IMG/VR virus record: IMGVR_UViG_3300036781_000418
Span: 124,001 to 188,000 of that record
Reading direction: 5' to 3' (one strand)
DNA length: 64,000 nt
This document shows, piece by piece, positions 819-58,194 of this stretch (its first letter is position 1; the number at the start of each line of letters is the position of its first letter). Below the pieces are notes generated by a model that saw nothing but the letters and a program-made list of their open reading frames with translations, was not told the DNA's origin and did no database searches. A program made the translations under genes and the position numbers.

Positions 819-3800
819 ATGGCGGATACCAACGAAATTGAAGCCCTAAAAACGCTTCAGCGGATCGAGAAGCTGCTGCGTTCGAACTCGGCTACGTCCA
901 GCGCTCCAGCCGCCGAACGGCTGTCCGCAAAACGACTCCCTGGCGGCGCGAACAACGACACCATGAAGGACGCGGCGGACGCGAACAAGACCCTGCGTGC
1001 CGTGGCTGGAGCGTCCAAGAAGCTGAACGCCACGACGATCGCGCTAACGGACTCATTTAAGTCCCTCAACACCGACATTCGTCGTGCCTCGGTTGGCATT
1101 GGTACGTTCACAAGCCAGCTGTCTAAGGCGTTGTCCGCCCTGAAGGGCGAGGTTGCTGGAAAGCCGGCCGAGCAGGCTGAGGTCGTTGGAACTGAGAAGC
1201 CGCTGACTGAACTTGGTGACATGCTCGTCGCCACGACCAAGAACTTTAGCAACCTAAACTCGGAGCTGGAGAAGCTGGTTGGTAACTACGCTAGGCAGGC
1301 GGGCGTTGGCTCTGGTCCAGCCCCACTGCTTGGTGCAATTCCACGTGCTCCTGGCCCAGCACCCGCCCCAGCACCGGCTCCAGGGAAGGTCCCCGGTGCC
1401 CTCCAACAGACCCCGGTGTTGAGCACCATTGGAACGTTCCTTAAGGGGCTCTCGACCTCAACGGTTGGTCTCTACAGTATGACGGAGGTGCTTGGTAAGC
1501 TGTGGAAGGTCACGCAGCAGGTCACCGGTGACTTCTTCGCTCTATCCAAGGTTGGCCTCGGTTCAGCTGGAAACTTGCAGACGTTGTACGTGAACGCCGC
1601 CAAGGCGGGCATGTCGCTGGCTGACTACTCCAAGCTCCTCCAGAACAACGTGTCCTTGGCCGCACGGGCTGGATCACTGAACAACTTTGACAAGCTAACG
1701 TCCGCCGCCGACAAGCAGCTTGCCCAGCTTGGCGTCTTCGGTGAGGACGCCAAGAACCTGCAGGCCACGCTGCTGAACACGGCCACGCTGGCCGGGGTTC
1801 CACAGGCCCAGTTTGCCGACGTCCTGAACGATCAAATTTCAACGTTCGACAAGCTCCGTAAGGTCACCAACCTGACCGCCTCAGAGTTCGCCGACCTTGT
1901 TACGACGGTCTCACAGTCTGATCAAGCCCAAAAGGAGTTGGTTGGTCTCGCCCCAGATGAACGGGCTGCACGTCAAAGCCAGCTCGTTGAGCTGGCCGCC
2001 ACGGGCCGTCAACTTGGTCTGAACGCGGACGCATCGAAGAAGTTGACCGATGCCTTGATCGCCCAGCGCGGTCAGACGGTCAAGCAGCGGTTTGAAGCCG
2101 CTGGCCGAATCCGCCAGCTCGGTGCGTTCCTTGGCTTGGGCGACCAGGCTGAAGAGGCCGCACAGATTACCATGAAGGGTCGTAACGCGACGGTCGAGGA
2201 ACAGCAACGCGCACGTGAGATCGCGGGTAACCTTGATCAGGCCAACCAACAGCAGTACGGTGAGAACGGGTTTGGCGGTCAGAATGTCCAGGACCAACTT
2301 GAAGAGGCGCTGAAAGGCACCGCGTTCGGTGGTCTCATGGAGGCCCAACGTCCAGCCCAACTTGCTGGTCAGTCGGCTGAGGTCTTCAACAAGGACTTTG
2401 GCAAACACGTTGGCGCGTTCGGTCAGGCGGTTGGTAACCTCCTGAAGTACGTGGCCGGAATTGGTGCAAGTCCACTTGGCCCACTGCTGGACGTCGCCGC
2501 CGGCGCGATCGCCGGTGTCTTTGGGAAGTCGCTTATCACGCCGTTGTTCAACATGCTGACCAAGGCGTTCCCAAGTCTGGGCGCCAAGCTGTTCAAGGGG
2601 GTTGAAGGCGGAGCTGAAGCTGGTGGCGGTGGCGTCATGGACAAGATCCGAAGCCTCTTCTCAGCCGCTAAAACGGACGGCGCCGCCCTTGGAACTCGCG
2701 CTCGAGCAAGTATCGCCGGGTTCAAAGAATCTGGCGCTGGCATCCGTGCTGGAGCCGTTGATTGGGTTAAGAACATTGGTCCAAGCACCACCAAGTGGTT
2801 TAAGGACATGGGTGCGACGATCAAGGACCTCAGCGAAACGGTCAAGGCCACGCCAAAGAACGCCTGGGGCGCCACGGTTGACGGTCTAAAATCCATTGGT
2901 TCAACGGTCAAGGATCTAGCGTCAGGTACGAAAACCTTCCTGTCCGACGCGCCGTTGTCTAAGATCGGTACGCTGTTTTCAGATGCGGCCAGCTCGGCTA
3001 AGGTTGGTCTAACTGGGCTTAGCGATATTCTAATCGGTGGTCTCGCCGCAGCCGGTCCCGCTATCAAGACCTTCTTTAAGAGCACGTTCCTCGTCAGCGC
3101 CATCATCGACGGCGTCAGTGAACTGTTTACCGGTGCTATCACCGCGGCCTTCAGTTCAGACGGTGGTGGTATCTTGGATCGCATCGGTGGTGTACTGTTC
3201 GCGGCGCTGCGCGCCATCCCAGCGATGATCACGGACACGATCGACTACATCTTTGGCACGAACCTCACGAACATCCTTGATCAGATTCTGGCCCTAGCAC
3301 GCACCACGCTGATGACGATCTCTGAAAAGGCGGTCGGATTGGTGGTTGAAATCCTGTCCCACATCCCGTTTGTCAAGGACTCAAGGATGTTTAAGGACTT
3401 GAAGGCCTACAACGAGAAGCAGACCAAGGACATCGAGGCTTCCTACGACACGATCTCTCAGCTGCAGGCCGATTCTTCGTCGGACATCATCTCGGTTGGT
3501 AAAAAGCGTAAGGAACAATACGACGCCCAAGAGGATGATGCCAACAAGGCGACTGACAAGGCGATCCAAGCCACGAACAAGTTCAACTCCACCATCATGG
3601 CCGGCTCGGTCACGACCGCGGGCTTGATCGCCGACGCTCAAGCCCTCCAAGGCCAACAGCTCGCCGTGCCAGGAGCGCAGTCCCAGGCAACGGTGAATTC
3701 TCAGGGAGTGACCCAGCAGGCCCCAGTAAATACAGGCACAGATCAAGCTACCGGCGCGCCGAACTCGCAACCAGCCCAGCTCACTCTCGCCGACGTCGTC

Positions 3801-3956
3801 ACCGCGCTAAACAAGCTCATGGCGATCAACCAGCAGAGTGTTGACGCTGAACAACGACAGGTGGAGCTCGCCGAGCAGATGCTGAGCTCAACGGCTCGCA
3901 CGACAAGGACGTTTATGTCCTCTGAGTCGATGAATGCGATGTTGCTGCGCGCCTAA
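819..3956 (+). CDS. Tape-measure-like tail/baseplate protein
   Basis: 1045 aa, rich in Ala/Gly/Leu/Gln, mostly helical, with hydrophobic segments in the C-terminal half. It follows a late promoter and lies next to the baseplate hub and portal genes. Confidence 0.5.
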   Translation: MADTNEIEALKTLQRIEKLLRSNSATSSAPAAERLSAKRLPGGANNDTMKDAADANKTLRAVAGASKKLNATTIALTDSFKSLNTDIRRASVGIGTFTSQLSKALSALKGEVAGKPAEQAEVVGTEKPLTELGDMLVATTKNFSNLNSELEKLVGNYARQAGVGSGPAPLLGAIPRAPGPAPAPAPAPGKVPGALQQTPVLSTIGTFLKGLSTSTVGLYSMTEVLGKLWKVTQQVTGDFFALSKVGLGSAGNLQTLYVNAAKAGMSLADYSKLLQNNVSLAARAGSLNNFDKLTSAADKQLAQLGVFGEDAKNLQATLLNTATLAGVPQAQFADVLNDQISTFDKLRKVTNLTASEFADLVTTVSQSDQAQKELVGLAPDERAARQSQLVELAATGRQLGLNADASKKLTDALIAQRGQTVKQRFEAAGRIRQLGAFLGLGDQAEEAAQITMKGRNATVEEQQRAREIAGNLDQANQQQYGENGFGGQNVQDQLEEALKGTAFGGLMEAQRPAQLAGQSAEVFNKDFGKHVGAFGQAVGNLLKYVAGIGASPLGPLLDVAAGAIAGVFGKSLITPLFNMLTKAFPSLGAKLFKGVEGGAEAGGGGVMDKIRSLFSAAKTDGAALGTRARASIAGFKESGAGIRAGAVDWVKNIGPSTTKWFKDMGATIKDLSETVKATPKNAWGATVDGLKSIGSTVKDLASGTKTFLSDAPLSKIGTLFSDAASSAKVGLTGLSDILIGGLAAAGPAIKTFFKSTFLVSAIIDGVSELFTGAITAAFSSDGGGILDRIGGVLFAALRAIPAMITDTIDYIFGTNLTNILDQILALARTTLMTISEKAVGLVVEILSHIPFVKDSRMFKDLKAYNEKQTKDIEASYDTISQLQADSSSDIISVGKKRKEQYDAQEDDANKATDKAIQATNKFNSTIMAGSVTTAGLIADAQALQGQQLAVPGAQSQATVNSQGVTQQAPVNTGTDQATGAPNSQPAQLTLADVVTALNKLMAINQQSVDAEQRQVELAEQMLSSTARTTRTFMSSESMNAMLLRA

Positions 3957-3974: not shown

Positions 3975-5714
3975 ATGTCAATGTTTACTGGCTACTGGCA
4001 GATTCTTACGCCGAAGACGCGTAAGGACTTCTACACCACGTTGTCCACCGACGCCTACGACCCTCGTGCAACCGACGGTTCGTCCCTCTCCGCCGTCAGC
4101 TGGTACGCCAGCGTTATGCGTGGCCCAAATACCCGCATGTCGCAGTACAAGCAGTTCGACGCGATGGACGCCGACATCGACATCGCCCGCTCGTTGGACA
4201 TCATCTCCGAGGAGATGACCAACATGGACGACAAGACGAACCTACCGTTCATCATCGACTGGCAGAAGGAGGACAACCAAGACGTGTCCGACTCCGCCGT
4301 CGTGACCGTTCGTGCCGCCCTGCGGCAGTGGACGCAGCTCCAGCAGCTGACACGCCGCAACTTCCAAATTGCACGGAAGATGGTGCTGTACGGAGACTGC
4401 TTCTTCAAGAAGTCGTCTGACACTCGGCGCTGGGAATACGTCGACCCTATCAACGTCGTCGGGATTGAGGTTGACCAGTACGGCAACAAGATCTCGTACC
4501 ACATCAAGCAGCCAACGGCGAACGCTCAGGCGGGCGTGACACGTGGTGACCAAGTCTTCATCGTGCCGGCCGCCGCCATGATTCACTTCTCGATGTCCGA
4601 CGAAATGGGCGACTCCGCTCCGTTCGGTCAGTCGATTCTGCGCCCAATCTACCGCGTCTACCGTCAGCTCTCGATGCTGGAAGACGCGGTGATCATCTAC
4701 CGTATCGTCCGAGCCCCCGAACGTCGTGTGTTCTACCTTGACGTGGGCAACATGAACGCCCAGCAGACGAAGCGCTACATGGAGACCGTCAAGGCCGAGC
4801 AGCGCCAGAAGCGTATTCCAGGCGTCAGCTCGAACAACGCGTCCGACGTTGTCGACGGTGCCTACGATCCACAGTCCATCTCACAGGACCTGTTTTTCCC
4901 CGTTACGGCCGGCGGCCGCTCCTCACGCGTTGAGGTGCTGCCAGGCGGTACTGAGGACTTTGGCACGACCCTGCTGAAGAAGTTTGAAGAGAAGATCTTC
5001 CGCGGTCTGCGTATTCCAACGTCCTACATGGGCGCTTCCACCACCGGTGGTACGGACCCACAAACGAACGACGGTAAGGTCGGTATCGCGTACATCGAGG
5101 AGCTCCGCTTCTGCAAGTTCATTCAGCGTCTCCAGATGCGCATGAATCAAATCTACGACGAAGAGTTCAAGGTCTACATGAAGGTCTGCGGCCTGCAGAT
5201 CGACGATGAAGTCTTCCAGATTCGACTGCCTGAGCCAGCCAACTTTGCCCTGTACCGCCAGGCCGCCCTTGACGCCGACCTTGTGTCGTCCTTCAAGAAC
5301 ATCGAGGACACCGACCTGCTGTCACGTCGTCTGCTTCTCAAGCGCTACCTTGGCCTGACCGACGACGAGATCCAGATGAACGAAGTTCTCCGCAAGGAAG
5401 AGCAAGGTATCGAGGACACGCCAGACTACACGGCGATCCAACAGCTGTACGACCCAGCCATCTACAAGAACCGTGATCCAATCAAGATCAAGAAGGCCAG
5501 TGAGCCTGAACCTGGTGATGAGGGTACCGGTCAAGAGCTTGGTGGCGACATCGGCATCGGCGGCGAGACCGGCGGATTTGGTGGAGGCGAGCAGCCAGGT
5601 GGTGAAGGTAGTGAGGAGGCCGACCTCCTGACACCTGAACCAGAAGAGACCGGTGGCGCTGAGCCAGCCGCTCCGGCCGCCCCAGCAGGTGGTGAAACTG
5701 AACAACCCGCGTAA
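3975..5714 (+). CDS. Portal protein, T4 gp20-like
   Basis: Motifs MLEDAVIIYRIVRAPERRVFYLDVGNM, QDLFFP, RSSRVEVLPGG and ELRFCKFIQRLQ. Has an acidic, Gly-rich C-terminal tail. Confidence 0.95.
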   Translation: MSMFTGYWQILTPKTRKDFYTTLSTDAYDPRATDGSSLSAVSWYASVMRGPNTRMSQYKQFDAMDADIDIARSLDIISEEMTNMDDKTNLPFIIDWQKEDNQDVSDSAVVTVRAALRQWTQLQQLTRRNFQIARKMVLYGDCFFKKSSDTRRWEYVDPINVVGIEVDQYGNKISYHIKQPTANAQAGVTRGDQVFIVPAAAMIHFSMSDEMGDSAPFGQSILRPIYRVYRQLSMLEDAVIIYRIVRAPERRVFYLDVGNMNAQQTKRYMETVKAEQRQKRIPGVSSNNASDVVDGAYDPQSISQDLFFPVTAGGRSSRVEVLPGGTEDFGTTLLKKFEEKIFRGLRIPTSYMGASTTGGTDPQTNDGKVGIAYIEELRFCKFIQRLQMRMNQIYDEEFKVYMKVCGLQIDDEVFQIRLPEPANFALYRQAALDADLVSSFKNIEDTDLLSRRLLLKRYLGLTDDEIQMNEVLRKEEQGIEDTPDYTAIQQLYDPAIYKNRDPIKIKKASEPEPGDEGTGQELGGDIGIGGETGGFGGGEQPGGEGSEEADLLTPEPEETGGAEPAAPAAPAGGETEQPA

Positions 5715-5742
5715 ATAAGCCATCACCCGTATTGGAGTCCCT

Positions 5743-6354
5743 ATGCAACAGATCCTAAAAGAATACCTCGCCCCTCAGGTGGCCAACCTCACCGAGATGA
5801 AGCAACACAATGGGGACACGTACCTCAGCGGCATCTTGATGCAGTCGGAGGTTATCAACGGCAACGGTCGTAAGTACCGTCGCGGCGAGCTTTCATCGGT
5901 CGTCGAAGAATGCTTTAAGAAGCTGAAGTCCGGCATGTACATCATGGGTGAACTGAACCACCCAGATACGCTGTCCATCGACCTGAACAACGTCTCCCAT
6001 GCCATCACCGAGATGCGCATGGACGGCAACAACGTCGTCGGTCGTATGAAGCTGCTCGGCACCCCGAAGGGTCAGATCGCCAAGGCCATCATGGAAGGTG
6101 GCGTCCGGTTGGGCGTCTCCTCACGTGGTACAGGCTCAGTCAATGAATCTGGTGAAGTGTCTGGCTTTAACTTCGTGACGATGGACATTGTGTCCGTGCC
6201 GTCCGCCAAGGACGCCCTACCTGACCTCGTCTACGAGTCACTAAACTCCAAGAAGATCGTCACGCTGGCCGAGTCCGTGGTGCACGATGAGAAGGCTCAA
6301 GCCCACCTGTTCAAGGCGGTGTCCGCACTGATCCAATCGATCACCAAGAAGTAA
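5743..6354 (+). CDS. Prohead core protease, T4 gp21-like
   Basis: NGNGRKY, GELNHP (catalytic His), GVSSRG (catalytic Ser) and DIVSVPS. TAAATA box at 5712-5717. Confidence 0.95.
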   Translation: MQQILKEYLAPQVANLTEMKQHNGDTYLSGILMQSEVINGNGRKYRRGELSSVVEECFKKLKSGMYIMGELNHPDTLSIDLNNVSHAITEMRMDGNNVVGRMKLLGTPKGQIAKAIMEGGVRLGVSSRGTGSVNESGEVSGFNFVTMDIVSVPSAKDALPDLVYESLNSKKIVTLAESVVHDEKAQAHLFKAVSALIQSITKK

Positions 6355-24098: not shown

Positions 24099-24563
24099 AT
24101 GAACATCTTTAAGCTTAGCACCGACATCAATCAGCTGCAGCTCCAGATGATCGCGTTCTTCGATCGGTGGGAACAGCAGATCAAGCTGGCTGAACCTCTC
24201 TTTAAGATCGAGGGCTCCAAACTCGAGGACCTTGCACGCACGATTCCACAGCACCAGTTCCACTTTGCTGGGCTGGCCCAGGAGGCGAAGGCTGCGGTTA
24301 AATACTTCGAGTCCATGCTTGAACAGCAAGAGGCCATCTACGCCAAGAACTACGCGCACGGCAACCGTGCCTACGGTTCACGTGAGGTCCAGCAGTTCAT
24401 CCAAGGCGAGAAGGAGGTGGTTGAGATGAAGCAGTTGATCGTCCAAGCCGCCTTCTACCAAAACCAGCTCGCTGAAATCGTCGAGGCCATCAAACAAATG
24501 GGGTGGATGCTCGGCCATATCGTCAAGCTCCGTGTCGCATCACTTGAAGAGACCATCATCTAA
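24099..24563 (+). CDS. UvsY-like recombination mediator
   Basis: All-helical 154 aa between UvsX and UvsW, ending IKQMGWMLGHIVKLR as UvsY-like proteins do. Confidence 0.65.
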   Translation: MNIFKLSTDINQLQLQMIAFFDRWEQQIKLAEPLFKIEGSKLEDLARTIPQHQFHFAGLAQEAKAAVKYFESMLEQQEAIYAKNYAHGNRAYGSREVQQFIQGEKEVVEMKQLIVQAAFYQNQLAEIVEAIKQMGWMLGHIVKLRVASLEETII

Positions 24564-25060
24564 TGAACAAATTTTACAACTCCTTCTCCGACTACCAGTT
24601 CAACCAGCAAACCATGCAAGTGGCGCCACCGATCACCAGTGGTGGAGTTCTGGGTGGTGGCGTATCGTACGGCGTCATTGCGCAGCCAGTCCAGCTGACC
24701 GCAGCCGCGCCAGCGTTCGTCACGTACCAAACCTACAACTTGACAAGTGGCGCCCAGATGGGCTGGTCTGACATGAAGGTGGAGGCTAACCCGGCCACGC
24801 AGCCGTCCACGCACCACGACTGCTTCAACCAACGCGCCGACAGCACCGATAGCATCACCACGATGTTCGCTGGCTGGTTGCCTGACGGCCGCAACGTCGT
24901 CATGACGTTGAGCCCAGAGCAGAACATCACACCACGTGACTCGCTCAAGCTGCAGGAGCTGATCGCCTTCATGACCGATTCCAAGGCCAAGGGCAAGCTT
25001 AACCCGTACGCCTACGCCATGAAGCACCACATCATCCAGCACTTCAAGCTGGAGGTCTGA
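24563..25060 (+). CDS. Hypothetical protein
   Basis: 165 aa, translationally coupled on both sides. Confidence 0.6.
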   Translation: MNKFYNSFSDYQFNQQTMQVAPPITSGGVLGGGVSYGVIAQPVQLTAAAPAFVTYQTYNLTSGAQMGWSDMKVEANPATQPSTHHDCFNQRADSTDSITTMFAGWLPDGRNVVMTLSPEQNITPRDSLKLQELIAFMTDSKAKGKLNPYAYAMKHHIIQHFKLEV

Positions 25061-26472
25061 TGACCAAGAAGGCCGACATCTGGGTGCATGACGAAGTCTA
25101 CGCCCACATCAAAGGTCTTCAACCCCAGGACCGACAGTTCCTTTGGAACAAGTTTGGCATTGAGGTTGAAGGCTCCTTCTACATGCCGGCCCGCCGCACT
25201 GGTCGCTGGGACGGCAAGTTGCGCTTCTTCGACAAGGAAGACCGCATCTTCATTCGGCTGTTGGATGAGCTGATTCCCTACCTTGACAAGTGGGGCTACG
25301 AGGTTGAGCTGCACGACGAGCGTAAGCCCGTCCAGCTTATCAAGTCGCGCATCACTGAGGACTACTTCATCAAGGATCCGGACCAGCCAATCAAGGTGAA
25401 GCTGCGCCCATACCAAGTGCACGCCATCAACAAGGCGATGGACTCAACGTACGGCATTCTTGAGATGGCAACGGGCTCAGGTAAGTCGTTGACGATCGCC
25501 GGCATCTGCGCCCTCTTTACGGAGAACGACAAGCGCTGCATGGTGATCGTGCCGTCGGCCGACTTGGTTGGCCAGACGTCAGCCTCCTATCAACTCGTCG
25601 GCATTCCACATGGTACCTACTCAGGCAGTGCCAAGGACCTCTCTCAGCCACACGTCGTGGCCACGTGGCAGGCCCTGCAGAACAACCCTTCGATCGTGAA
25701 GGACTTCGACTGCATCATCATTGACGAGACGCACGGCGCAACGGCCGAGGTCGTGGGCAAGCTGATCTGCGACCACGCCAAGCACGTGCCGTACCGCTTC
25801 GGCTTTACAGGCACGATGCCCAAGAAGCAAACCGACCTCTACACCTTGCGGGGTTCGATCGGTGAGGTGCTCTACCAAATCTCGGCGGCCGAGCTCATTC
25901 AAATGGGTTACCTCGCTGATTTGGAGATTACGCCGGTTGAGGTGCAGGCTGACGTTGATGAGGAGTTTCCAGACTACGGCTCTGAGAAGACCTACTTGGC
26001 GTCCAACACCGAGCGACTTGACCTGCTGGCCGACTTCATCGTGAACACGTGCGAAAAGCACGGCAACACGCTGGTCCTTGTCAACTCCATCAAGCAGGGC
26101 CGCAAGCTGGAAAAGCTGATCAAGGACTCCGTCTTCCTCTGTGGTGCGACGGAGAACGAGGTCCGAGCCGAGTGGTACTCAACCTTCGCTGACCGTGACG
26201 ATTTGATCGTGATCGCAACAGCTGGGATCGCGTCAACCGGAATTTCGATTGACCGTATCTTTGCCCTTGTTATGATTGACTCTGGCAAGTCGTTCATTCG
26301 GTGCATTCAGTCCATTGGACGCGCAATTCGGAAGAACGGCGACAAGGTACGAGCGGCCGTGTACGACATCTACTCCTCCCTGAAGTGGAGTAAGAAGCAC
26401 GCTAGAGAGCGTCAGAAGTTTTACAAGGAAGCGAAGTACCCACTTAACAAAGTTGCAAAGGTGAAGGCATGA
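25060..26472 (+). CDS. uvsW: UvsW-like SF2 DNA helicase
   Basis: LRPYQ, ATGSGKS, DETH, GFTGT, STGISI and QSIGRAIR. Confidence 0.92.
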   Translation: MTKKADIWVHDEVYAHIKGLQPQDRQFLWNKFGIEVEGSFYMPARRTGRWDGKLRFFDKEDRIFIRLLDELIPYLDKWGYEVELHDERKPVQLIKSRITEDYFIKDPDQPIKVKLRPYQVHAINKAMDSTYGILEMATGSGKSLTIAGICALFTENDKRCMVIVPSADLVGQTSASYQLVGIPHGTYSGSAKDLSQPHVVATWQALQNNPSIVKDFDCIIIDETHGATAEVVGKLICDHAKHVPYRFGFTGTMPKKQTDLYTLRGSIGEVLYQISAAELIQMGYLADLEITPVEVQADVDEEFPDYGSEKTYLASNTERLDLLADFIVNTCEKHGNTLVLVNSIKQGRKLEKLIKDSVFLCGATENEVRAEWYSTFADRDDLIVIATAGIASTGISIDRIFALVMIDSGKSFIRCIQSIGRAIRKNGDKVRAAVYDIYSSLKWSKKHARERQKFYKEAKYPLNKVAKVKA

Positions 26473-26789
26473 CCGAAGCTGTACCGACACGCGTAGTTGT
26501 CCAGTTTAGTGTTGAGGACATGGATGGGTTGGTGGTAGCGTTTGGTGAAACCGCCGTCATTTACGTTGATGGAAAACACTGCGCCTCCACGATGAAGTAC
26601 ACAGGGCTAGATTTTAAGATTAAGGCGGATAAACATGGTTGAACTAGAAGACGTCGAGCTGAAGCTCTTAGCCACAATGGTGGCCGAGGTTCGCTGCAAA
26701 TCCAACGAGGTTGGTGACATCCATACGGCGGTCTTGGAGGCCGTGCGCATGGTGTTGTACCGCTACGGTGGCTCGATCGTGGAGGCGCA

Positions 26790-27167
26790 GTGGCCATGAC
26801 AACTTCAACTGAAATCCGTGAGTGGTTCAGCGATGACGCCGAAAATCGACAGCGTGAGACGATCAGCCACTTCATCTGCGATAAGCGCGTGGACGTTGAG
26901 GAGCGGTTGGCCATCTGGCGAGAAACGCCAGACAACTTGGCTACCACTCTCAACTACATCACCGATGTCGACCTGCCCGTGTTTGAGTCAATGTACTCAG
27001 ACTTCAACATTTTCGAGGTGGTGGCTGAAATTGGTAGCAAGTACCAGGAGGTTGACCTTCGTGAGGTCACTGGCTACTTGACGGAAAAGTACACCACTGA
27101 AGAGCTGCGTGCCCTTGACGTCGAGCTCATGGAACACGGCGCCCACTACGTTATCTTGGATTGGTAA
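26790..27167 (+). CDS. Hypothetical protein
   Basis: Acidic 125-aa ORF. Confidence 0.55.
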   Translation: MAMTTSTEIREWFSDDAENRQRETISHFICDKRVDVEERLAIWRETPDNLATTLNYITDVDLPVFESMYSDFNIFEVVAEIGSKYQEVDLREVTGYLTEKYTTEELRALDVELMEHGAHYVILDW

Positions 27168-27170
27168 ATC

Positions 27171-27578
27171 ATGTACTACACCGCAACTATCCTTACCCTT
27201 GATCAACCAACCGGCAACGGCCGAACCTACACGACTGAGGTGGCGCGTGAGATGATCGAGCAGCATTACAAGCGCCACATTCAAACTGGCAAGGCCAGCT
27301 TCGGCCAGTTTGGATACCCAACTGAAGAATCCAAACAGGCAACGATCGACCTGAACTCGGTCTCGCATGTAGTCGAAAGTCTGCGTGTCGAAGACGGCAA
27401 GTTGGTGGGCACCATTCGCGTGCTTGGATCTCCATTGGGCAATATCCTCAAGGAGCTGTTGTTGAACAACACCCCCAACTGTGGCTTCCGCCCGCGCGGT
27501 CTTGCCTGTGTCACTCACGAAGGCGTCATCTTCAACTACGAGTACATCAGCATCGACTTCACTCGCAACCCTGCATGA
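27171..27578 (+). CDS. Prohead-protease paralog lacking the catalytic His and Ser
   Basis: Aligns by eye with 5743..6354 over its full length (GNGRTY, IDLNSVSH, VLGSPLG, IDF), but has GQFGYP and GFRPRG at the catalytic motifs. Confidence 0.75.
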   Translation: MYYTATILTLDQPTGNGRTYTTEVAREMIEQHYKRHIQTGKASFGQFGYPTEESKQATIDLNSVSHVVESLRVEDGKLVGTIRVLGSPLGNILKELLLNNTPNCGFRPRGLACVTHEGVIFNYEYISIDFTRNPA

Positions 27579-27844
27579 AGGCGCGTCAACTCAAGTATGC
27601 CTTGCAGCGCCAAGGCCCGCGCCGAATTCAGGCGGAGGGTATGGAACGGTACCCTGAAGACGGCACGCCACCCAACTACGTGGCTATCACGAAGATCGTG
27701 GTGCCAACACAGCGAGACAAGGACGAGCTGTTGAGGGCGATAGAGTACATTCACTATCTGCGTGAGCTAGACACCGACTACATCGCGGTGAATACGCTGG
27801 CCCACATGTACCTACGCCCTGAACTTATCGAAGTAGCACCATGA
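27575..27844 (+). CDS. Hypothetical protein
   Basis: 89 aa with ATGA overlaps. Confidence 0.55.
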   Translation: MKARQLKYALQRQGPRRIQAEGMERYPEDGTPPNYVAITKIVVPTQRDKDELLRAIEYIHYLRELDTDYIAVNTLAHMYLRPELIEVAP

Positions 27845-28359
27845 TCATCCTCAACGAAATCAACCGTCTGTACCTGCTGGACAGCCTTACCTCGCCGTTG
27901 CCTGAAGGCAGCCGCTTTCACTGGACGTTCAGTGCCCAGCAGCTCGACTTCATGCTCTCGGAGATGCAGTACCTTGAGGAGTACGAGGGCAGCTGTGTGA
28001 GCCTGATTACTGAGGACTCCACCATCACCGTGCCGACCAGCTGGAACGTGATGATCGTGGACCGTGAGACGTACACCGTTGAGATGATTCCAGCCCACCT
28101 CGCGGCCGTGTTCAACCACGACGTCATGGTGTTCTCGCCGACCGACACGAAGTTGCAGACCGTAAAGATTCGTGTCGACCAGCTGCTTGAAGACCACCGC
28201 ATCGTCTACCCATCGTTCGACAAGTCGTCCGCGATGGTCTACGGCATCGCCCCGAAGCTGCAGCTTGGCCGTGACCCAATGGCACGTGGCATCATCGTTG
28301 GCCCGTCCGACCTCTTCCGCTACATCAACCGCAAGACGGTTGGCGACATTCTCTCCTAA
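27841..28359 (+). CDS. Hypothetical phage protein
   Basis: 172 aa, globular composition, strong phage codon usage. Confidence 0.65.
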   Translation: MIILNEINRLYLLDSLTSPLPEGSRFHWTFSAQQLDFMLSEMQYLEEYEGSCVSLITEDSTITVPTSWNVMIVDRETYTVEMIPAHLAAVFNHDVMVFSPTDTKLQTVKIRVDQLLEDHRIVYPSFDKSSAMVYGIAPKLQLGRDPMARGIIVGPSDLFRYINRKTVGDILS

Positions 28360-28367
28360 GGAAAACC

Positions 28368-28787
28368 ATGTCTGGACTTGTTGAACAACTTGAACTGAAG
28401 ACCGACAACTCGGAGTCGTTGGAACATGCCATTGCCATCTGCATGAAGTGGAACTCAAGGGTGTCCTCCTTCTACGTTACCGAAGAGAATGGCTTGCCAT
28501 GGATGCACCTCTGCTGGGGTGACGGCAAGGACCAAAAGCTAGGCGTGAACTTCTTTCCAGCACCGCTGGAGAACCCGAAAATGGTTACCGACCAGGTGTG
28601 GAGTTGGCTCCAAGCTCAGTTTAAGGACCAGAAGAGCGGCTGTAAGCGGTGGCCTGGATTTGACACCCTTGGTGATGGAACCGATTCGCCGGGCTTTTAT
28701 TTCAAGAGCTGCCATGACTTTTCTGGTGCGAAGGGGGTCTACCCCTTCATCAAGGTTTCACCGTACTACATCTACTATTCCAAGTAG
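28368..28787 (+). CDS. Hypothetical protein
   Basis: 139 aa with an AAGGA RBS. Confidence 0.6.
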   Translation: MSGLVEQLELKTDNSESLEHAIAICMKWNSRVSSFYVTEENGLPWMHLCWGDGKDQKLGVNFFPAPLENPKMVTDQVWSWLQAQFKDQKSGCKRWPGFDTLGDGTDSPGFYFKSCHDFSGAKGVYPFIKVSPYYIYYSK

Positions 28788-28840
28788 GCCGGGCTAAATA
28801 GGCGATCATTAAGCGGGCTAGACCCGCTTTGAGGTCTCCT

Positions 28841-29416
28841 ATGTCAATGAATTTCCCTGATGCCGTGGCGTTCGCCATGAAGTACGAGGTTGGACCCTTC
28901 TTCAACCAAGCCGATCCAGAAACTATCGCAGGTCTGATCGCAACCCAAGCACAACGCCACAAGGTCGGCTACACCAACGACCCGCATGATAAAGGTAGTG
29001 AGACCAAGTTTGGTGTCGCCATCACCGCCAACCCTGGTGTCAACATCACCACCCTCACGTGGCCACAAGCGGTGGAGATCTACCGCGCAAAATATTGGAT
29101 GGCCGGCGGCTGCCACCTCCTCAACGAACGTGTAGCGGTGATCCACTTCGACGGTTGCGTCAACCATGGCGTAGGTCGCGCCTCGAAGTTTCTGCAGCAG
29201 ATCGCTGGAGTCAACCAAGACGGCAACGTCGGTCAAGTGACCGCCAACGCCCTCGCGGCGATGGACCCACTTAGCGTGTGCTCGCGAATTGCCGCTCGCC
29301 GCGAGCAGTTCTACCACGACATCGTCATCAACGATCCAACCCAGTCTAGGTTCCTCAATGGGTGGCTCGCACGAATCGAGGACGTGTTGGCAACCGTGTC
29401 TAAACCAACGTTCTGA
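28841..29416 (+). CDS. Glycoside hydrolase family 108 endolysin with PG-binding C-terminus
   Basis: DPHDKGSETKFGV, FDGCVNHG, FLQQIAGVNQDGNVG and RFLNGWLAR. TAAATA at 28795-28800. Confidence 0.88.
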   Translation: MSMNFPDAVAFAMKYEVGPFFNQADPETIAGLIATQAQRHKVGYTNDPHDKGSETKFGVAITANPGVNITTLTWPQAVEIYRAKYWMAGGCHLLNERVAVIHFDGCVNHGVGRASKFLQQIAGVNQDGNVGQVTANALAAMDPLSVCSRIAARREQFYHDIVINDPTQSRFLNGWLARIEDVLATVSKPTF

Positions 29417-34081: not shown

Positions 34082-34330
34082 ATGTACACCGTCTACTCCA
34101 AACCTGACTGTCCGCAGTGCGACGCCGCGAAGGCGCTGCTGACCTTCAACGGCCACCCGTACCGTGAGGTCATTCTCGACGTCGGTCAAGCCAAGCTTGA
34201 TGAATCCACGTACATCTCACGTGAGGACCTGCTCCAGCAGATTCCAACGGCCCGCACGATGCCACAAATCTACGAGGGCATCAAGCTCGTCGGTGGGTTG
34301 ATCGACCTGAAGCGTCACCTGATCACATGA
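34082..34330 (+). CDS. Glutaredoxin (NrdC-like)
   Basis: VYSKPDCPQC, RTMPQI and VGGL. Confidence 0.92.
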   Translation: MYTVYSKPDCPQCDAAKALLTFNGHPYREVILDVGQAKLDESTYISREDLLQQIPTARTMPQIYEGIKLVGGLIDLKRHLIT

Positions 34331-34755
34331 AGATCATGGACATGAAACCTGAGCTCGGCACCTACGTTTGGCTGACCCCGACTTCTGGCACGGTTGAGGG
34401 CCTGCGCGCCTGGGCCGGAGTTCAAGGCTTTGAGTCGCTGATCGACTTTACCAAGCTCCACGTGACCGTGCTCTACTCAAGGTCGTACCTTCCGGTGATC
34501 CCTGATAAGACCTGGTTCTACCCAGCGACGGCGTCGGGCTTCAAGCAGCTAGACAAGAGCATGTTCGTCATGACCCTTGACTCGCCTGGTATCGTGCAGC
34601 GTCATGAGAAGCTGATGTCAATTGGCGCCACACACGACTGGGCGACCTTCATCCCACACATGTCCCTGTGGAAGGGGCCACCTCCGCCGCAACTCGAGCC
34701 GCCAGGGTTCACGATGATCTTCACGAACGAGCAGTGCGAACCGCTCAAGCCATAA
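34327..34755 (+). CDS. acb1: Acb1-like anti-CBASS 2H phosphodiesterase (T4 gp57B family)
   Basis: GTYV, LHVTVLYSR, MTLDS, GATHD, PHMSL and EPLK parallel T4 Acb1 as recalled (GLYV, IHSTICYSR, LVLDS, GATHD, PHITL, EPLK). Confidence 0.85.
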   Translation: MKIMDMKPELGTYVWLTPTSGTVEGLRAWAGVQGFESLIDFTKLHVTVLYSRSYLPVIPDKTWFYPATASGFKQLDKSMFVMTLDSPGIVQRHEKLMSIGATHDWATFIPHMSLWKGPPPPQLEPPGFTMIFTNEQCEPLKP

Positions 34756-35749: not shown

Positions 35750-36238
35750 ATGGAACAACTCACCACCAACCCAAACAGGATCGACCTTGACGAGGCCTAC
35801 ATGCAGATGGCCGAGATCTGGGCGAAACGCTCCAAGGCGAACCGCAAGCAGGTCGGTGCCCTGATCGTCAAGGACAAGCAGATCATCTCGGACGGCTACA
35901 ACGGCATGCCAAGTGGCGCCAGTGACGACGTCTGTGAAGTCATGGTCTACCCTGACTCATACGATGGGCGTGACGGTATCGGTGGATCACCGGACAAGCT
36001 CATGAAGACGAAGAACGAGGTCCTCCATGCCGAGTCCAACGCCCTCATGAAGGTGGCCGAGAATGGTGGTGTTGGCGTCCAAGGCGCGACCCTCTACGTG
36101 ACCATGTCGCCGTGCCGTGACTGCGCCAAGCTGATCAAGCAGGCCAAGATCGCCCGTGTGGTTTACCGTGAAGAATACCGTGACACCGGTGGCGTCGACT
36201 TCCTCCGTGAATACGGTGTGCAGGTGATCAAGCTATGA
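35750..36238 (+). CDS. dCMP deaminase
   Basis: QVGALIV, DGYNG, HAESNA and SPCRDC. Confidence 0.93.
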   Translation: MEQLTTNPNRIDLDEAYMQMAEIWAKRSKANRKQVGALIVKDKQIISDGYNGMPSGASDDVCEVMVYPDSYDGRDGIGGSPDKLMKTKNEVLHAESNALMKVAENGGVGVQGATLYVTMSPCRDCAKLIKQAKIARVVYREEYRDTGGVDFLREYGVQVIKL

Positions 36239-36807
36239 GCCTTGACACCCTTACGACTGAGCTAAACGGCCGCACCCTTCGATACGACGGCGTCAGCATC
36301 GTCAGCCCTGAAGCCGTGCCCGACCTGTTCATGAAGGGCGTCAACCCTTGCCTGCTCCGCGTGAACGTGCTGGACCCTGACATCGAGACGTTCAACCGCC
36401 TAGTGCCACTGGATCCAGTCAACGTGGTTGGACCTGAACCGATCACGTTCAACCGTGGCTGGCTTCTACCTAGGCTGACGGCGAAGCTGGACGTCCAAGC
36501 ACACGTCATGACGCTGCTCCAGGCAAAGCTGTTGACTGGGTGTTACCTCAAGCACGAGCAGGTCGATGCGGCCATGAAGCGTACCGAGGCGGAGCTGGCC
36601 CTGTTCACCAAGCATGGGATGGACGACCTGCTCCGCTGCCTCATCTGGGTGATTGAAAAGTTCAAGGAGCACAAGGTCGTGTACGGCGTCGGTCGTGGCT
36701 CGAGCTGTGCGTCGTACGTGCTCTTCCTGATTGGTCTCCACCTGGTGGATCCAATCAAGCATGAAATCCCAATTGAGGAGTTCTTCAAGCCGGCTGAGCA
36801 GCCGTGA
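36235..36807 (+). CDS. DNA polymerase III alpha (DnaE)-like N-terminal palm fragment
   Basis: EAELALF, GVGRGSSCASYVLFLIGLHLVDPIKHEIPIEEF, which is the GRGS region of DnaE. Confidence 0.85.
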   Translation: MSLDTLTTELNGRTLRYDGVSIVSPEAVPDLFMKGVNPCLLRVNVLDPDIETFNRLVPLDPVNVVGPEPITFNRGWLLPRLTAKLDVQAHVMTLLQAKLLTGCYLKHEQVDAAMKRTEAELALFTKHGMDDLLRCLIWVIEKFKEHKVVYGVGRGSSCASYVLFLIGLHLVDPIKHEIPIEEFFKPAEQP

Positions 36808-56191: not shown

Positions 56192-57934
56192 ATGGGAAAA
56201 CTGAAGACACTCCCCAAAGCCATCATCGGACTTATCGTCATCGGTGGTGTCGCTTTCGGAGTCAACACCGCCATCAACAAAGGCTACTTCAAGCAGAAAA
56301 CTGAAGTGGCCGTCCAGGTGCCGGACAAGATCGACGGCCTTGGTGGTGGCATCACCTCCACCGCACCGAAACCGACCGCAACCACAGCCATCAACGTGAT
56401 GGCCGCCACAACGGGTGAGACCCTCCGCGTGAAGACCATTCCGTGGAACGGCACGCTTGGCCTGATGCACGCCCAAGCGTCCGGCGCCTTCCGTGCCCAC
56501 AACCTCAACGTGGACATCAAGCGTGAAGACGACTACTCCAAGATGATCGCCGACATGGCGGCCTTCGCGAAGGATCCGACGCAAGGTGTTCACTTCACGG
56601 TGATCATGGGTGACGGCCTGCCGGCCTACATCATCGGCCTGAACGAGGCGCTCAAGCCCTTCGGTCAGCAGGCTGAAATGATCGCGGGTATCGGCTACTC
56701 GCGTGGTGAGGACAAGTGCGTGATCGCGGACGAGGCCAACCCTCGCGGTGCCCTGATCGCCGGCGTCCTTGGTGACGGCGACATCAACATCTGCATCAAG
56801 TACGCCGCGGACAACGCCATCCCGATCAACGCCAACCCGAAGACCTACGACCCCGACGCCATGAACTTCATGGGCACCGGCTCGTTCGTTGAAGCGGACG
56901 AGAAGTTCATCTCCTCGGCCCGCAACAACTACAAGGGTGGTGCGTGTGAAGAGCGCAAGAACACGAAGACCGGTGACAAGCAGACGGTCTGTGTCACGGG
57001 CTCGGCCACCTGGACTCCCGGTGACGTGAAGGACTTCAGCGAGCTGAAGAAGCTTGGCAAGTCGCTTCGTGTGATCGGCTCTACCAAGGAGTACGCATGG
57101 CAGATGCCAGCCGCGATCATCGGCAACAAGACGTGGATGGCCAACAACCGCCCGACGGTCGAAGCCTTCCTCGCCTCCATCCTTGAATCCGGTGAGAAGG
57201 TCCGCGGTGACAACCAAGCGCTGATGGTCGCCTCCGCCGAACAGGCCAAGGTGATCGGTGAGCAGGACGCTAGCTACTGGGCTGAAATGTTCAAGGGCAC
57301 GACGGACGTTAGCCCCAACGGCAAGACGATTCAGCTTGGTGGCTCCACCACCAACGGTCTCTCGGACGCGGCCTTCATGTTCGGCTTGAACGGAGCGGAC
57401 GACCTCTACTCCAAGGTGTACAACGTGTACGGCAAGATCTCGGTGAAGTACTTCCCCGACCTCATGCCCGGCGGTCTCCGCCCATACGGCGACGTCGTAA
57501 ACAAGTCGTTCATCCAAGCGTTGCTCGCCAAGGCCACCAACGTCGCGCAGGTCGACAAGCCGGTTTACTCCAGCACGACGACTGAAACCTTCGCGGCCAA
57601 GTCGTACGCCATCGAGTTCGAAACCGGCAAGGCCACCTTCTCGCCCTCCGCGGTCAAGGTGCTGAACGACCTGTTGGATCAAGCCGCCGTGACGACGCTG
57701 AACGTGCAGATCAACGGCCACACGGACAACACTGGTGATTCTGGCACGAACATCGGGCTGTCCAAGGACCGAGCCGAAGCGGTGAAGAACTTCCTGATGA
57801 AGAACGCACCGTCCACCTTCACGGCCGAACGTGTCCAAACGCGCGGCTACGGTGACACGCAACCGATCGCGGACAACAACACCGTCGCGGGCAAGGCCAA
57901 GAACCGCCGCGTTGAGGTTATCCTCCGCAAGTAA
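56192..57934 (+). CDS. ABC-type substrate-binding domain fused to a C-terminal OmpA/MotB peptidoglycan-binding domain
   Basis: N-terminal TM anchor and an NMT1/THI5-like body (YSRGEDK, TWTPGD); C-terminal FETGKA, INGHTDNTG, NIGLSKDRAEAV, RGYG and NRRVE. Confidence 0.88.
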   Translation: MGKLKTLPKAIIGLIVIGGVAFGVNTAINKGYFKQKTEVAVQVPDKIDGLGGGITSTAPKPTATTAINVMAATTGETLRVKTIPWNGTLGLMHAQASGAFRAHNLNVDIKREDDYSKMIADMAAFAKDPTQGVHFTVIMGDGLPAYIIGLNEALKPFGQQAEMIAGIGYSRGEDKCVIADEANPRGALIAGVLGDGDINICIKYAADNAIPINANPKTYDPDAMNFMGTGSFVEADEKFISSARNNYKGGACEERKNTKTGDKQTVCVTGSATWTPGDVKDFSELKKLGKSLRVIGSTKEYAWQMPAAIIGNKTWMANNRPTVEAFLASILESGEKVRGDNQALMVASAEQAKVIGEQDASYWAEMFKGTTDVSPNGKTIQLGGSTTNGLSDAAFMFGLNGADDLYSKVYNVYGKISVKYFPDLMPGGLRPYGDVVNKSFIQALLAKATNVAQVDKPVYSSTTTETFAAKSYAIEFETGKATFSPSAVKVLNDLLDQAAVTTLNVQINGHTDNTGDSGTNIGLSKDRAEAVKNFLMKNAPSTFTAERVQTRGYGDTQPIADNNTVAGKAKNRRVEVILRK

Positions 57935-57977
57935 AAGTTACACGCTATGGTCGGGTTCCCTCCCTGACCATCTTTAT

Positions 57978-58006
57978 AGGACGAGTCGAAAGGCTCGTCC
58001 TTTTTT
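57978..58006 (+). terminator. Rho-independent terminator
   Basis: aggacgagtc-gaaa-ggctcgtcct followed by T6. Confidence 0.85.
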
Positions 58007-58024
58007 GACTCGTGAGCACCACCA

Positions 58025-58115
58025 GACGGCGACCGGTTGCACCCGAATATACGATGCACAGAGCACAACACCGTAGCCGGCCAGTGCCTCAGACGTCGCC
58101 TCGTGTCGCCGAACG
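58025..58115. ncRNA. Candidate structured element, copy B
   Basis: Reverse-complement homolog of 34833-34933. cggcgac and gtcgccg can close the domain. Confidence 0.45.
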
Positions 58116-58136
58116 ACGTACACCTGAATTCACTCG

Positions 58137-58165
58137 TTCACAACGGCTTGGCCGATCGTTATGAT
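58137..58165 (+). promoter_or_regulatory. Sigma70-like promoter for the permease/ATPase genes
   Basis: TTCACA-N17-TATGAT. Confidence 0.6.
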
Positions 58166-58194
58166 GGTCGAGCGTGTACTAACCGAGATCAACT

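What the first reader, a model, noticed from the sequence alone, without database searches (positions are those of the whole stretch)
27171..27578. Catalytically dead paralog of the prohead protease located outside the head module
Seen in sequence: the 135-aa ORF aligns along its length with 5743..6354 (GNGRTY/GNGRKY, IDLNSVSH/IDLNNVSH, VLGSPLG/LLGTPKG, SIDF/TMDI). GELNHP has become GQFGYP and GVSSRG has become GFRPRG. Established: these His and Ser residues are the catalytic residues of T4 gp21-family proteases. Inference: a pseudo-protease that could regulate timing of head maturation, bind L-x-E cargo peptides, or act as a decoy for host defences that sense or target the phage protease.
Basis: partly seen in the sequence, partly recalled or inferred. 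Interest (0 to 1): 0.6.

Follow-up and report, generated by a model that had tools for sequence, protein, structure and literature searches.

The report
Inactive prohead-protease paralog in jumbo phage
A 342-kb soil jumbo phage carries, far from its head genes, a short intact copy of its capsid-maturation protease that lacks the catalytic serine and histidine. It belongs to a large, previously unnamed family of such "dead" proteases in big phages, and what they do is unknown.

Summary
ORF 27171-27578 (+, 135 aa) is a genuine paralog of the phage's own S77 prohead protease (5743-6354): BLASTP E 2e-18, 26% identity over its full length. An AlphaFold2 model (pLDDT 96.8) matches T4 gp21 with Z 15.3 and rmsd 2.0 Å. 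The catalytic His is Tyr49 and the catalytic Ser is Arg107. The N-terminal pro-segment and C-terminal tail of the enzyme are absent.

It is neither a one-off nor a decaying pseudogene. An exhaustive profile search gives at least 106 clusters (at 50% identity) of 115-170 aa phage proteins with the same Ser→Arg change (motif F-R-P/T-R/A-G) and a hydrophobic or aromatic residue in place of His. A syntenic 332-kb relative keeps the gene in the same slot at 40% identity. Six other large-phage genomes also pair a canonical protease with a distant short copy lacking one or both catalytic residues.

The gene lies in a tightly coupled uvsY-helicase block of the replication module, with no late-promoter motif directly upstream. 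The true protease has one 26 nt upstream.

Function is inferred only. My best guess is a non-catalytic, cytoplasmic binder of protease-type peptide motifs that works off the capsid, possibly against protease-sensing immunity.

The closest precedent is the "cryptic protease" paralog of phiKZ-like phages (SPN3US gp117), which is a separate lineage.

The parts
27171..27578 (+). Gene for the 135-aa inactive S77-like protein (pseudo-protease). It corresponds to the core domain of T4 gp21, residues 38-172.
27315..27317 (+). Codon for Tyr49, at the position of the catalytic His (GELNHP becomes GQFGYP).
27489..27491 (+). Codon for Arg107, at the position of the catalytic Ser (GVSSRG becomes GFRPRG). 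The Arg is present in 104 of the 150 best family representatives.
27555..27557 (+). Codon for Asp129. It aligns with the Asp that is invariant in canonical enzymes and is inferred to be the third triad residue. It is retained here and in 59% of the Ser-to-Arg family.
5743..6354 (+). Canonical S77 prohead protease (203 aa, His73/Ser126 intact) in the head module, between the portal and the scaffold-like and major head proteins.
5711..5717 (+). Late-promoter-like motif GTAAATA, 26 nt upstream of the canonical protease. It is one of 15 STAAATA sites in the window (1.75 expected by chance).
24099..28787 (+). Block of ten tightly packed or overlapping genes (UvsY, 165 aa, Dda-like helicase, 57, 54, 125, pseudo-protease, 89, 172, 139 aa). 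It contains no STAAATA motif and is the likely transcription unit of the pseudo-protease.

Best explanation
Shown. The ORF is a real gene for a truncated, catalytically inactive paralog of the T4 gp21-type (S77) prohead protease. It keeps the whole beta-barrel core and the non-catalytic conserved motifs of the enzyme (N-x-N-G-R-x-Y, V-S-H, L-x-T-P-x-G). It has Arg in place of the nucleophilic Ser and Tyr in place of the general-base His. It also lacks the N-terminal pro-segment and the C-terminal tail. It belongs to an old, diverse family found only in phages, with its own signature G-x-x-G-[Y/M/F]-P ... F-R-[P/T]-[R/A]-G.

Inferred mechanism. The protein is made from the replication-module operon, before or independently of head assembly. 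Without the targeting tail it stays in the cytoplasm. There it acts as a non-cleaving binder of the peptide motifs that this protease family recognises (cleavage after Glu in T4). The conserved Arg at the nucleophile position would be placed to pair with the acidic P1 residue or a carboxylate. The most likely benefit is to shield cleavable targets from the active protease. One candidate target is the bait loop of host sensors that fire when cut by prohead proteases, as recently shown for CBASS CD-NTases. In other words, it would be an anti-defence substrate trap or decoy. Identity as a conserved pseudo-protease: about 0.9. The specific mechanism: about 0.3.
For: Homology and fold:
- BLASTP E 2e-18 to the phage's own protease.
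- PHROG 207 at 5e-15.
- AF2 pLDDT 96.8.
- Foldseek 5JBL probability 1.0, TM 0.79.
- VIA-align Z 15.3, rmsd 2.0 Å, 127 residues, gp21 residues 38-172; next best Z 8.2.

Loss of catalytic residues.

Family:
- 134 of the best 150 representatives are short.
- 104 of 150 have Arg at the Ser column.
- The His column holds M/Y/F/L/V/I in most of the short members; nearly all the His residues there belong to full-length canonical proteases.
- 81 of 135 members still hit Pfam S77 and no other family.
- All nearest ESM Atlas clusters are viral.

Selection:
- Intact ORFs with conserved motifs at 27-50% identity.
- Same genomic slot in a 332-kb relative at 40% identity.
- dN/dS 0.41 in one close family pair (low power).

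Off-capsid, early or accessory character:
- Position in the uvsY-helicase block.
- No STAAATA motif between 21959 and 28794, while the true protease has one 26 nt upstream.
- Diverges faster than its neighbours: 40% versus 51-75%, close to Acb1 at 37.5%.
- Patchy among related isolates.
- Acidic, median pI 5.0, which argues against nucleic-acid binding.

Biological plausibility:
- T4 gp21 activity triggers CBASS by cutting a CD-NTase loop.
- This phage encodes Acb1 7 kb downstream.
- Acb1 lies 4-8 kb from the short paralog in the relative L024, in a second lineage (L025 and the P0136 contig) and in Yersinia phage fHe-Yen9-03.
Against: - No experiment or computation here shows any binding partner. 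The complex prediction with the phage's own protease gave no verdict.
- No host, host defence system or RNA data are available; only the source soil metagenome holds this DNA.
- Expression timing is inferred from a promoter-like motif and gene packing only.
- Proximity to Acb1 is loose. It is absent in XacN1, RAS14 and LR756511, and may simply reflect inherited synteny. Acb1 also occurs in phages without the paralog.
- The proposed role of Arg107 is a structural guess made without coordinates.
- The canonical motif residues E, D/N and the second Arg of GVSSRG are relaxed in the family, so the substrate groove may not be preserved.
Confidence: 0.3

Rival explanations
1. It regulates the phage's own protease. 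The dead subunit would co-assemble with the active protease (gp21 is pentameric) or bind its pro-segments. This would hold the protease inactive in the cytoplasm until it is built into the prohead, and so tune the timing of maturation.
For: It has the same fold and keeps the conserved non-catalytic surface motifs. T4 gp21 is a pentamer that is auto-inhibited by its N-terminus and activated by self-cleavage. Every carrier genome examined also has a canonical protease. Premature protease activity is now known to be sensed by host immunity.
Against: The complex prediction gave no support, although that counts as no verdict. The paralog shares only 26% identity with its partner and is closer to other phages' short copies, so there is no sign of co-evolution with the local protease. 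Close relatives such as RsoM2USA do without it. It lies in another module with apparently different timing.
Confidence: 0.2
2. It has acquired a function unrelated to protease substrates. The barrel would be reused as a scaffold, and the conserved Arg and aromatic residue would form a new ligand or protein binding site, for example for a host factor or a small molecule linked to the neighbouring nucleotide-metabolism genes.
For: The replacement Arg is itself conserved, as are the flanking Phe and Pro/Thr, which suggests a new selected site rather than simple loss. Residues around the old active site are relaxed. In five lineages the neighbours are thymidylate synthases, helicases, ligase and RNR.
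Against: No conserved partner gene was found: DUF7487 is absent from this genome, and the flanking small ORFs are not conserved. The proteins are acidic, which argues against DNA binding. Many non-catalytic protease motifs are still kept.
Confidence: 0.25
3. It is an assembly factor inside the prohead: a non-cleaving adaptor or chaperone that binds L-x-E-type propeptides of core or cargo proteins and is built into the scaffolding core.
For: It retains the fold and several groove-region motifs. T4 proheads contain several small non-essential core proteins.
Against: It lacks the C-terminal region thought to target the protease into the prohead. It lies outside the head module and has no late-promoter motif directly upstream. 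Its distribution among related phages with similar heads is patchy.
Confidence: 0.1
4. It is a decaying relic of a duplicated protease gene (a pseudogene or 'cryptic protease') with no present function.
For: The catalytic residues are lost and both ends are truncated. It is missing in some relatives. The phiKZ-type counterpart was originally described as presumably inactive or cryptic.
Against: More than 100 diverse clusters have intact ORFs of uniform length with family-specific conserved motifs. The fold prediction is very confident. The gene is retained in position at 40% identity. Codon-position GC matches that of real genes. dN/dS is 0.41 in a close pair. The gene is translationally coupled to its neighbours.
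Confidence: 0.03
5. It is still an active peptidase that uses other residues, for example the conserved Ser65-His66 pair.
For: Ser65 and His66 are 93-98% conserved in the family, and Asp129 is retained.
Against: The same V-S-H motif is equally conserved in canonical enzymes that have their own Ser/His pair, and it is absent from T4 gp21, so it is not a catalytic pair there. Adjacent residues on one strand point to opposite sides (general structural knowledge). The nucleophile position holds a conserved Arg.
Confidence: 0.03

Closest known systems
T4 gp21 prohead protease (MEROPS/Pfam Peptidase_S77; PDB 5JBL)
   Same: It has the same fold (Z 15.3, rmsd 2.0 Å over 127 residues). It shares the motifs N-x-N-G-R-x-Y, L-x-T-P-x-G and G-x-G, and the Asp aligned with the invariant Asp of the canonical enzymes. 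It is found in T4-superfamily myoviruses.
   Different: The catalytic Ser is Arg and the catalytic His is Tyr. About 25-37 N-terminal residues (pro-segment) and about 40-50 C-terminal residues (tail) are missing. It is encoded in the replication module rather than between the portal and scaffold genes. It has no Pfam S77 hit of its own.
'Cryptic protease' paralogs of phiKZ-like giant phages (SPN3US gp117, PhiPA3 gp143, 201phi2-1 gp206; Ali et al. 2017, PMC5694885)
   Same: Both are short (136-145 aa) diverged second copies of the prohead protease in a giant phage. Both lack the C-terminal region, are encoded away from the active enzyme, are presumed inactive, and have unknown function.
   Different: Those derive from the S80 (phiKZ gp175) branch. 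They are reported to keep the Ser and Asp and to lack the His. The profile of the present family finds nothing in SPN3US, PhiPA3 or 201phi2-1, and hhalign against PhiPA3 gp143 gives 1% probability. The present family is defined by Ser-to-Arg and is far larger and more diverse.
Herpesvirus assemblin proteases
   Same: A distantly related fold (Z 6-8), and the same role in capsid maturation as the canonical enzyme.
   Different: No detectable sequence relationship, a Ser-His-His triad, and dimeric enzymes of eukaryotic viruses.

Membership tests
Peptidase S77 (T4 gp21-type prohead protease), as an enzyme | gp21 / assemblin-like beta-barrel fold | tested here: met
   AF2 pLDDT 96.8. 5JBL is the top match: Foldseek probability 1.0, TM 0.79; Z 15.3, rmsd 2.0 Å.
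Peptidase S77 (T4 gp21-type prohead protease), as an enzyme | Sequence match to the family model | tested here: inconclusive
   No Pfam PF03420 hit at E<=1 for this protein. However, it matches PHROG 207 at 5e-15 and the phage's own S77 protease at BLASTP 2e-18, and 81 of 135 family members hit PF03420.
Peptidase S77 (T4 gp21-type prohead protease), as an enzyme | Catalytic Ser (T4 Ser140, first Ser of GVSSRG) | tested here: not met
   Arg107 (GFRPRG).
Peptidase S77 (T4 gp21-type prohead protease), as an enzyme | Catalytic His (T4 His85, GELNHP) | tested here: not met
   Tyr49 (GQFGYP).
Peptidase S77 (T4 gp21-type prohead protease), as an enzyme | Third triad residue Asp | tested here: met
   Asp129 aligns with the Asp that is invariant in 16 of 16 canonical sequences. 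That this Asp is the triad residue is inferred.
Peptidase S77 (T4 gp21-type prohead protease), as an enzyme | N-terminal pro-segment and C-terminal tail that are self-cleaved or target the enzyme to the prohead | tested here: not met
   The alignment covers protease residues 27-154 of 203 and gp21 residues 38-172. The ORF starts and ends at the edges of the core domain.
Peptidase S77 (T4 gp21-type prohead protease), as an enzyme | Gene in the head module next to the portal and scaffold genes | tested here: not met
   It lies 21 kb away, between the Dda-like helicase and NrdA.
phiKZ-type 'cryptic protease' paralogs (SPN3US gp117 group) | Short second protease-like gene coexisting with an active prohead protease in a giant phage | tested here: met
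phiKZ-type 'cryptic protease' paralogs (SPN3US gp117 group) | Detectable sequence relationship to gp117 / PhiPA3 gp143 | tested here: not met
   The A2 profile has no match in SPN3US, PhiPA3 or 201phi2-1. hhalign probability is 1%.
phiKZ-type 'cryptic protease' paralogs (SPN3US gp117 group) | Ser and Asp kept, His lost | tested here: not met
   Here the Ser is also lost (Arg107).
Short Ser-to-Arg S77-like family (defined here) | Length 115-170 aa, motif G-x-x-G-[Y/M/F]-P and motif F-R-[P/T]-[R/A]-G | tested here: met
   135 aa, GQFGYP and GFRPRG. Its nearest relatives P0003 (50%), P0005 and P0008 (40%) have the same motifs.

The most novel reading that the evidence does not exclude
The Ser-to-Arg short S77 family would be a widespread class of phage pseudo-proteases that act as anti-defence decoys. 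Made before the real protease, they would occupy or mask the cleavable bait loops of host immune sensors that detect prohead-protease activity (such as CdnG-type CBASS). Alternatively, they would sequester free protease. Either way they would silence a protease-triggered alarm, giving a new mechanistic class of counter-defence built from a dead copy of the very enzyme being sensed.
Probability: 0.15. Interest if true: 0.85.

Novelty: new variant of a known kind. Interest (0 to 1): 0.55.

Why it matters
Dead copies of enzymes that persist under selection usually mark a regulatory or decoy role. A truncated second protease gene has so far been noted only in phiKZ-like phages, where it was treated as a cryptic relic.

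This work shows that the T4-type (S77) branch has its own much larger family, with a conserved Arg where the nucleophile was. The family is spread through jumbo and huge phages and has no separate Pfam model in the copy searched.

Prohead-protease activity has just been shown to trigger CBASS immunity. A protease look-alike that does not cut, is probably not encapsidated and is probably made early is therefore an obvious candidate modulator of that axis, or of premature protease activity.

The family also gives annotators a clear rule: motifs G-x-x-G-[Y/M/F]-P and F-R-P-R-G, about 130 aa, outside the head module. That rule avoids mislabelling these genes as prohead proteases.

Tried and rejected
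- Megablast of 26000-29000 against GenBank phages found no match.
- The search for related loci with the 135-row alignment failed because no stretch was conserved enough. With the 3-row alignment it returned only 7 weak viral loci, which I did not pursue.
- Complex prediction of the pseudo-protease with the phage's own protease gave ipSAE 0.00-0.01. That is no verdict and counts neither for nor against binding.
- DUF7487, seen near family members in two contigs, is absent from this genome. I rejected it as a conserved partner.
- The flanking small ORFs (125 aa upstream, 89 aa downstream) have no counterpart in the syntenic relative, so there is no conserved two-gene module.
- The T4 late-promoter consensus TATAAATA has no match in the window. 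The variant STAAATA is the enriched motif.
- The sigma-70 and terminator scan of 21.5-30 kb was no better than shuffled sequence.
- Only the source soil metagenome holds this DNA and no RNA run does, so I did not use read laying.
- dN/dS could be computed only on one close pair of family members from other contigs (8 synonymous, 14 non-synonymous changes, ratio 0.41). Power is low. The downstream-gene comparison in that script is invalid because of an indel.
- A word-indexed search with the family profile was swamped by canonical 207-aa marine proteases and added little.
- Co-occurrence with Acb1 showed no correlation: Acb1 is present in both carriers and non-carriers.
- The Fokine & Rossmann 2016 structure paper is not held.

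Full report
**1. The observation**

The window is bases 124001-188000 of a 342,591-bp virus record with direct terminal repeats, i.e. a complete jumbo phage. The only sequencing run that holds this DNA is a soil metagenome.

ORF 27171-27578 (+) encodes 135 aa. Its ATG lies 3 nt after the stop of the preceding gene, and its TGA overlaps the ATG of the next gene. Its codon-position GC (0.53/0.40/0.68) follows the pattern of bona fide genes of this genome. The overlapping antisense 173-aa ORF does not.

BLASTP against the 203-aa product of 5743-6354 gives 26% identity over residues 2-135 versus 27-154, E 2e-18.

The 203-aa protein is a Pfam Peptidase_S77 member (3e-25). The 135-aa protein has no Pfam hit but matches PHROG 207 'head maturation protease' at 5e-15.

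The 203-aa gene lies between the portal (3975-5714) and the scaffold-like and major head proteins. The 135-aa gene lies 21 kb downstream, among a gp32-like SSB, UvsX, UvsY, a Dda-like helicase and NrdA/NrdB. The genome holds exactly these two S77-like genes.

**2. The catalytic residues**

- The crystallised T4 gp21 chain (5JBL) carries Ala at the His of GELNHP and at the first Ser of GVSSRG.
- Hobbs and Kranzusch use H85A/S140A as 'dead' gp21.
- Ali et al. describe an H/S/D triad.

In the ORF these positions are Tyr49 and Arg107. Asp129 aligns with the Asp that is invariant in canonical enzymes. The protein therefore lacks both the nucleophile and the general base.

The conserved Ser65-His66 pair is not a plausible substitute. 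It is equally conserved in canonical enzymes that have their own catalytic pair, and it is absent from T4 gp21.

**3. Fold**

With a 135-row family alignment, AlphaFold2 gives pLDDT 96.8 and pTM 0.88.

- Foldseek ranks T4 gp21 (5JBL) first: E 2.5e-6, probability 1.0, TM 0.79. Herpesvirus proteases follow.
- VIA-align gives Z 15.3, rmsd 2.0 Å over 127 residues, covering gp21 residues 38-172. The next entry scores Z 8.2.

The protein is thus the bare core domain. It lacks the N-terminal segment that blocks the active site of the gp21 zymogen. It also lacks the C-terminal region thought to target the enzyme into the prohead.

**4. It is a member of a large family, not a private duplicate**

An exhaustive HMMER search of 1.84 billion cluster representatives found 5581 proteins at E<=1e-3.

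- Among the best 150, 134 are 106-175 aa long.
- In an alignment with the window's protease, 104 of 150 have Arg at the catalytic-Ser column.
- The His column holds M (36), Y (31), F, V, L and I.
- The 13 sequences with both His and Ser are nearly all the 200-230 aa (or longer, fused) canonical enzymes.

Column statistics show two things:

- Both groups share N-x-N-G-R-x-Y, V-S-H, L-x-T-P-x-G and G-x-G.
- The canonical G-E-L-D/N-H-P and G-V/I-S-S-R-G become G-x-L/I-G-[M/Y/F]-P and x-F-R-[P/T]-[R/A]-G.

Two subtypes are visible: Y/F at the His column with Asp kept (the window's type), and M with Asn.

Further properties of the family:

- 81 of 135 members still hit Pfam S77 and no other family, so no separate Pfam model exists in the copy searched.
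- All nearest ESM Atlas clusters are viral.
- The proteins are acidic, median pI 5.0.

On a maximum-likelihood tree (133 columns, poorly resolved), 15 of 16 canonical enzymes fall into one supported group of 27, together with some short forms that carry other substitutions. The window's own protease pairs with another phage's canonical enzyme (64% identity). The ORF pairs with short Ser-to-Arg proteins (P0003 at 50%, then P0005). The paralogy is therefore ancient.

**5. Who carries it**

These genomes pair one canonical protease (His and Ser intact) with one distant short or inactive copy:

| Genome | Size | Motifs of the second copy |
|---|---|---|
| Yersinia jumbo phage fHe-Yen9-03 (g113, annotated 'hypothetical protein') | 353 kb | SEIDP / LSSRG |
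| Uncultured huge phage LR756511 | 595 kb | GELGMP / FRSRG |
| Uncultured huge phage LR756501 | 735 kb | GELGYP / FRPRA |

By major head protein, the nearest isolates to the window's phage are Ralstonia phage RsoM2USA (52.5%), Xanthomonas phages XacN1 and Xoo-sp13, and Stenotrophomonas phages RAS14 and CM1.

- RsoM2USA, a Vibrio jumbo phage and Salmonella phage Munch have only the canonical gene.
- XacN1 and RAS14 have an additional degenerate short copy.

The gene is thus accessory and patchy in its distribution.

**6. Evidence of selection**

A 331,776-bp metagenomic contig (L024) is syntenic with the window. Its order is RecA/UvsX, UvsY, helicase, a 57-aa ORF, the short paralog (P0008), a 74-aa ORF, a 171-aa ORF, a muramidase, NrdA, NrdB, glutaredoxin and Acb1. 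Protein identities to the window are:

| Protein | Identity |
|---|---|
| UvsX | 75% |
| SSB | 64% |
| Helicase | 61% |
| UvsY | 51% |
| 172-aa ORF | 51% |
| Short paralog | 40% |
| Acb1 | 37.5% |

A second lineage (L025 and the P0136 contig) also keeps its copy in a fixed slot, after thymidylate synthase and before a lysozyme.

One close pair of family members gives dN/dS 0.41, from 8 synonymous and 14 non-synonymous changes. This has low power.

Uniform length, intact frames and family-specific invariant residues across more than 100 diverged clusters add to this. Together the evidence rules out neutral decay.

**7. Expression context (inferred)**

The motif STAAATA occurs 15 times in the window against 1.75 expected. 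It resembles the T4-type late promoter; that resemblance is from my own knowledge.

- Thirteen matches are on the + strand, mostly within 80 nt upstream of head, packaging, lysozyme and gp32-like genes.
- One lies 26 nt upstream of the canonical protease.
- None lies between 21959 and 28794.

The paralog sits in a 4.7-kb run of ten overlapping or abutting genes that starts with uvsY. This suggests transcription with replication and recombination genes rather than with head genes. No RNA data exist to check this.

**8. Mechanism**

What is shown: a conserved, non-catalytic gp21 core domain without targeting ends, encoded off the head module, fast-evolving, accessory and found only in phages.

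What I infer as most likely (about 0.3): a cytoplasmic binder of protease-type peptide motifs. The conserved Arg at the nucleophile position would pair with the acidic P1 residue or a carboxylate. The protein would shield cleavable targets. The most attractive target is the bait loop of host sensors that are activated by prohead-protease cleavage, recently demonstrated for CBASS CD-NTases and T4 gp21.

The phage invests in anti-CBASS defence, since Acb1 is at 34327-34755. Acb1 also lies 4-8 kb from the short paralog in L024, in L025 and the P0136 contig, and in the Yersinia phage. It does not in XacN1, RAS14 or LR756511, and Acb1 is also found in non-carriers. This is no more than a hint.

Rival explanations:

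- Regulator or poison subunit of the phage's own pentameric protease (0.2). The one complex prediction gave no verdict.
- New function at a new Arg/aromatic site unrelated to protease substrates (0.25).
- Intra-prohead adaptor (0.1).
- Relic (0.03).
- Still-active enzyme (0.03).

**9. Comparison with what is known**

The nearest precedent is Ali et al. 2017 (PMC5694885). They found a truncated, presumably inactive 'cryptic protease' paralog (SPN3US gp117, PhiPA3 gp143, 201phi2-1 gp206) of the S80 protease in phiKZ-like phages. They called a protease paralog in a phage genome unprecedented at the time.

The present family is a different lineage:

- Its profile finds nothing in those three genomes.
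- hhalign against PhiPA3 gp143 gives 1% probability.
- It has lost the Ser, whereas the phiKZ group is reported to keep it.

I found no paper describing the S77-branch short family. The literature library is incomplete, so this is not proof of absence.

**10. Verdict**

The finding is real. The pseudo-enzyme call is well supported and the pseudogene alternative is refuted. The specific function is open.

- Novelty: a new variant of a known kind, i.e. a dead prohead-protease paralog of giant phages, here as a large S77-derived Ser-to-Arg family.
- Interest: 0.55.

Noticed in passing
window 34327-34755 (+): A 142-aa protein matches Pfam Acb1 (anti-CBASS phosphodiesterase) at 5e-20. It sits just after NrdA/NrdB, a 221-aa ORF and a glutaredoxin. 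The same arrangement occurs in the syntenic contig L024. The Yersinia phage fHe-Yen9-03 Acb1 homolog (g106) lies 4.3 kb from that phage's short protease paralog (g113).
   Followed up: partly
window, 15 sites, e.g. 762, 5711, 6643, 9860, 11362, 15083, 15859, 21953, 28794, 34947: The motif STAAATA is 8-9 times over-represented (15 versus 1.75 expected). It is almost always on the + strand, shortly upstream of head, packaging, lysozyme and gp32-like genes. It is probably this phage's late-promoter core, a variant of T4's TATAAATA, which itself is absent from the window.
   Followed up: partly
P0053 (452 aa, metagenomic): One family member carries two tandem inactive protease-like domains (GMP.../FRL...) behind an unrelated N-terminal region of about 150 aa. 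The dead domain can therefore be duplicated and fused.
   Followed up: no
window 28829-29416 (+), TTG start; L024 11189-11758; L025 11568-12359 (-): A lysozyme gene lies 1-1.3 kb downstream of the short paralog in three contexts, but it belongs to a different family each time: GH108 plus PG_binding_3 here, PF11860 Muramidase in L024, and Phage_lysozyme2 in L025. This could be in-place replacement of the lysin or coincidence.
   Followed up: no
window 3975-5714 (+): The portal protein ends in a low-complexity tail of about 80 residues rich in Gly, Glu, Pro and Ala. This is unusual for T4-type portals.
   Followed up: no
window 819-3956 (+): A 1045-aa ORF directly upstream of the portal, preceded by a late-promoter-like motif, has no PHROG match at 1e-5.
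   Followed up: no
window 36235-36807 (+): A 190-aa ORF matches only the N-terminal (NTPase/PHP-adjacent) part of bacterial DNA polymerase III alpha (PF07733, 2e-11). It may be a fragment or a split gene.
   Followed up: no
LR756501 (L018), canonical protease ORF: In the 735-kb huge phage, the active S77 protease domain is fused to a long C-terminal coiled-coil or repeat region (open frame 811 aa). It looks like a protease-scaffold fusion.
   Followed up: no
L042 (XacN1 281402-281749) and L043 (RAS14 57917-58168): These isolates have very degenerate short S77-like second copies that lack even the N-G-R-x-Y and F-R-P-R-G motifs. They may represent later stages of divergence or independent origins.
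   Followed up: partly
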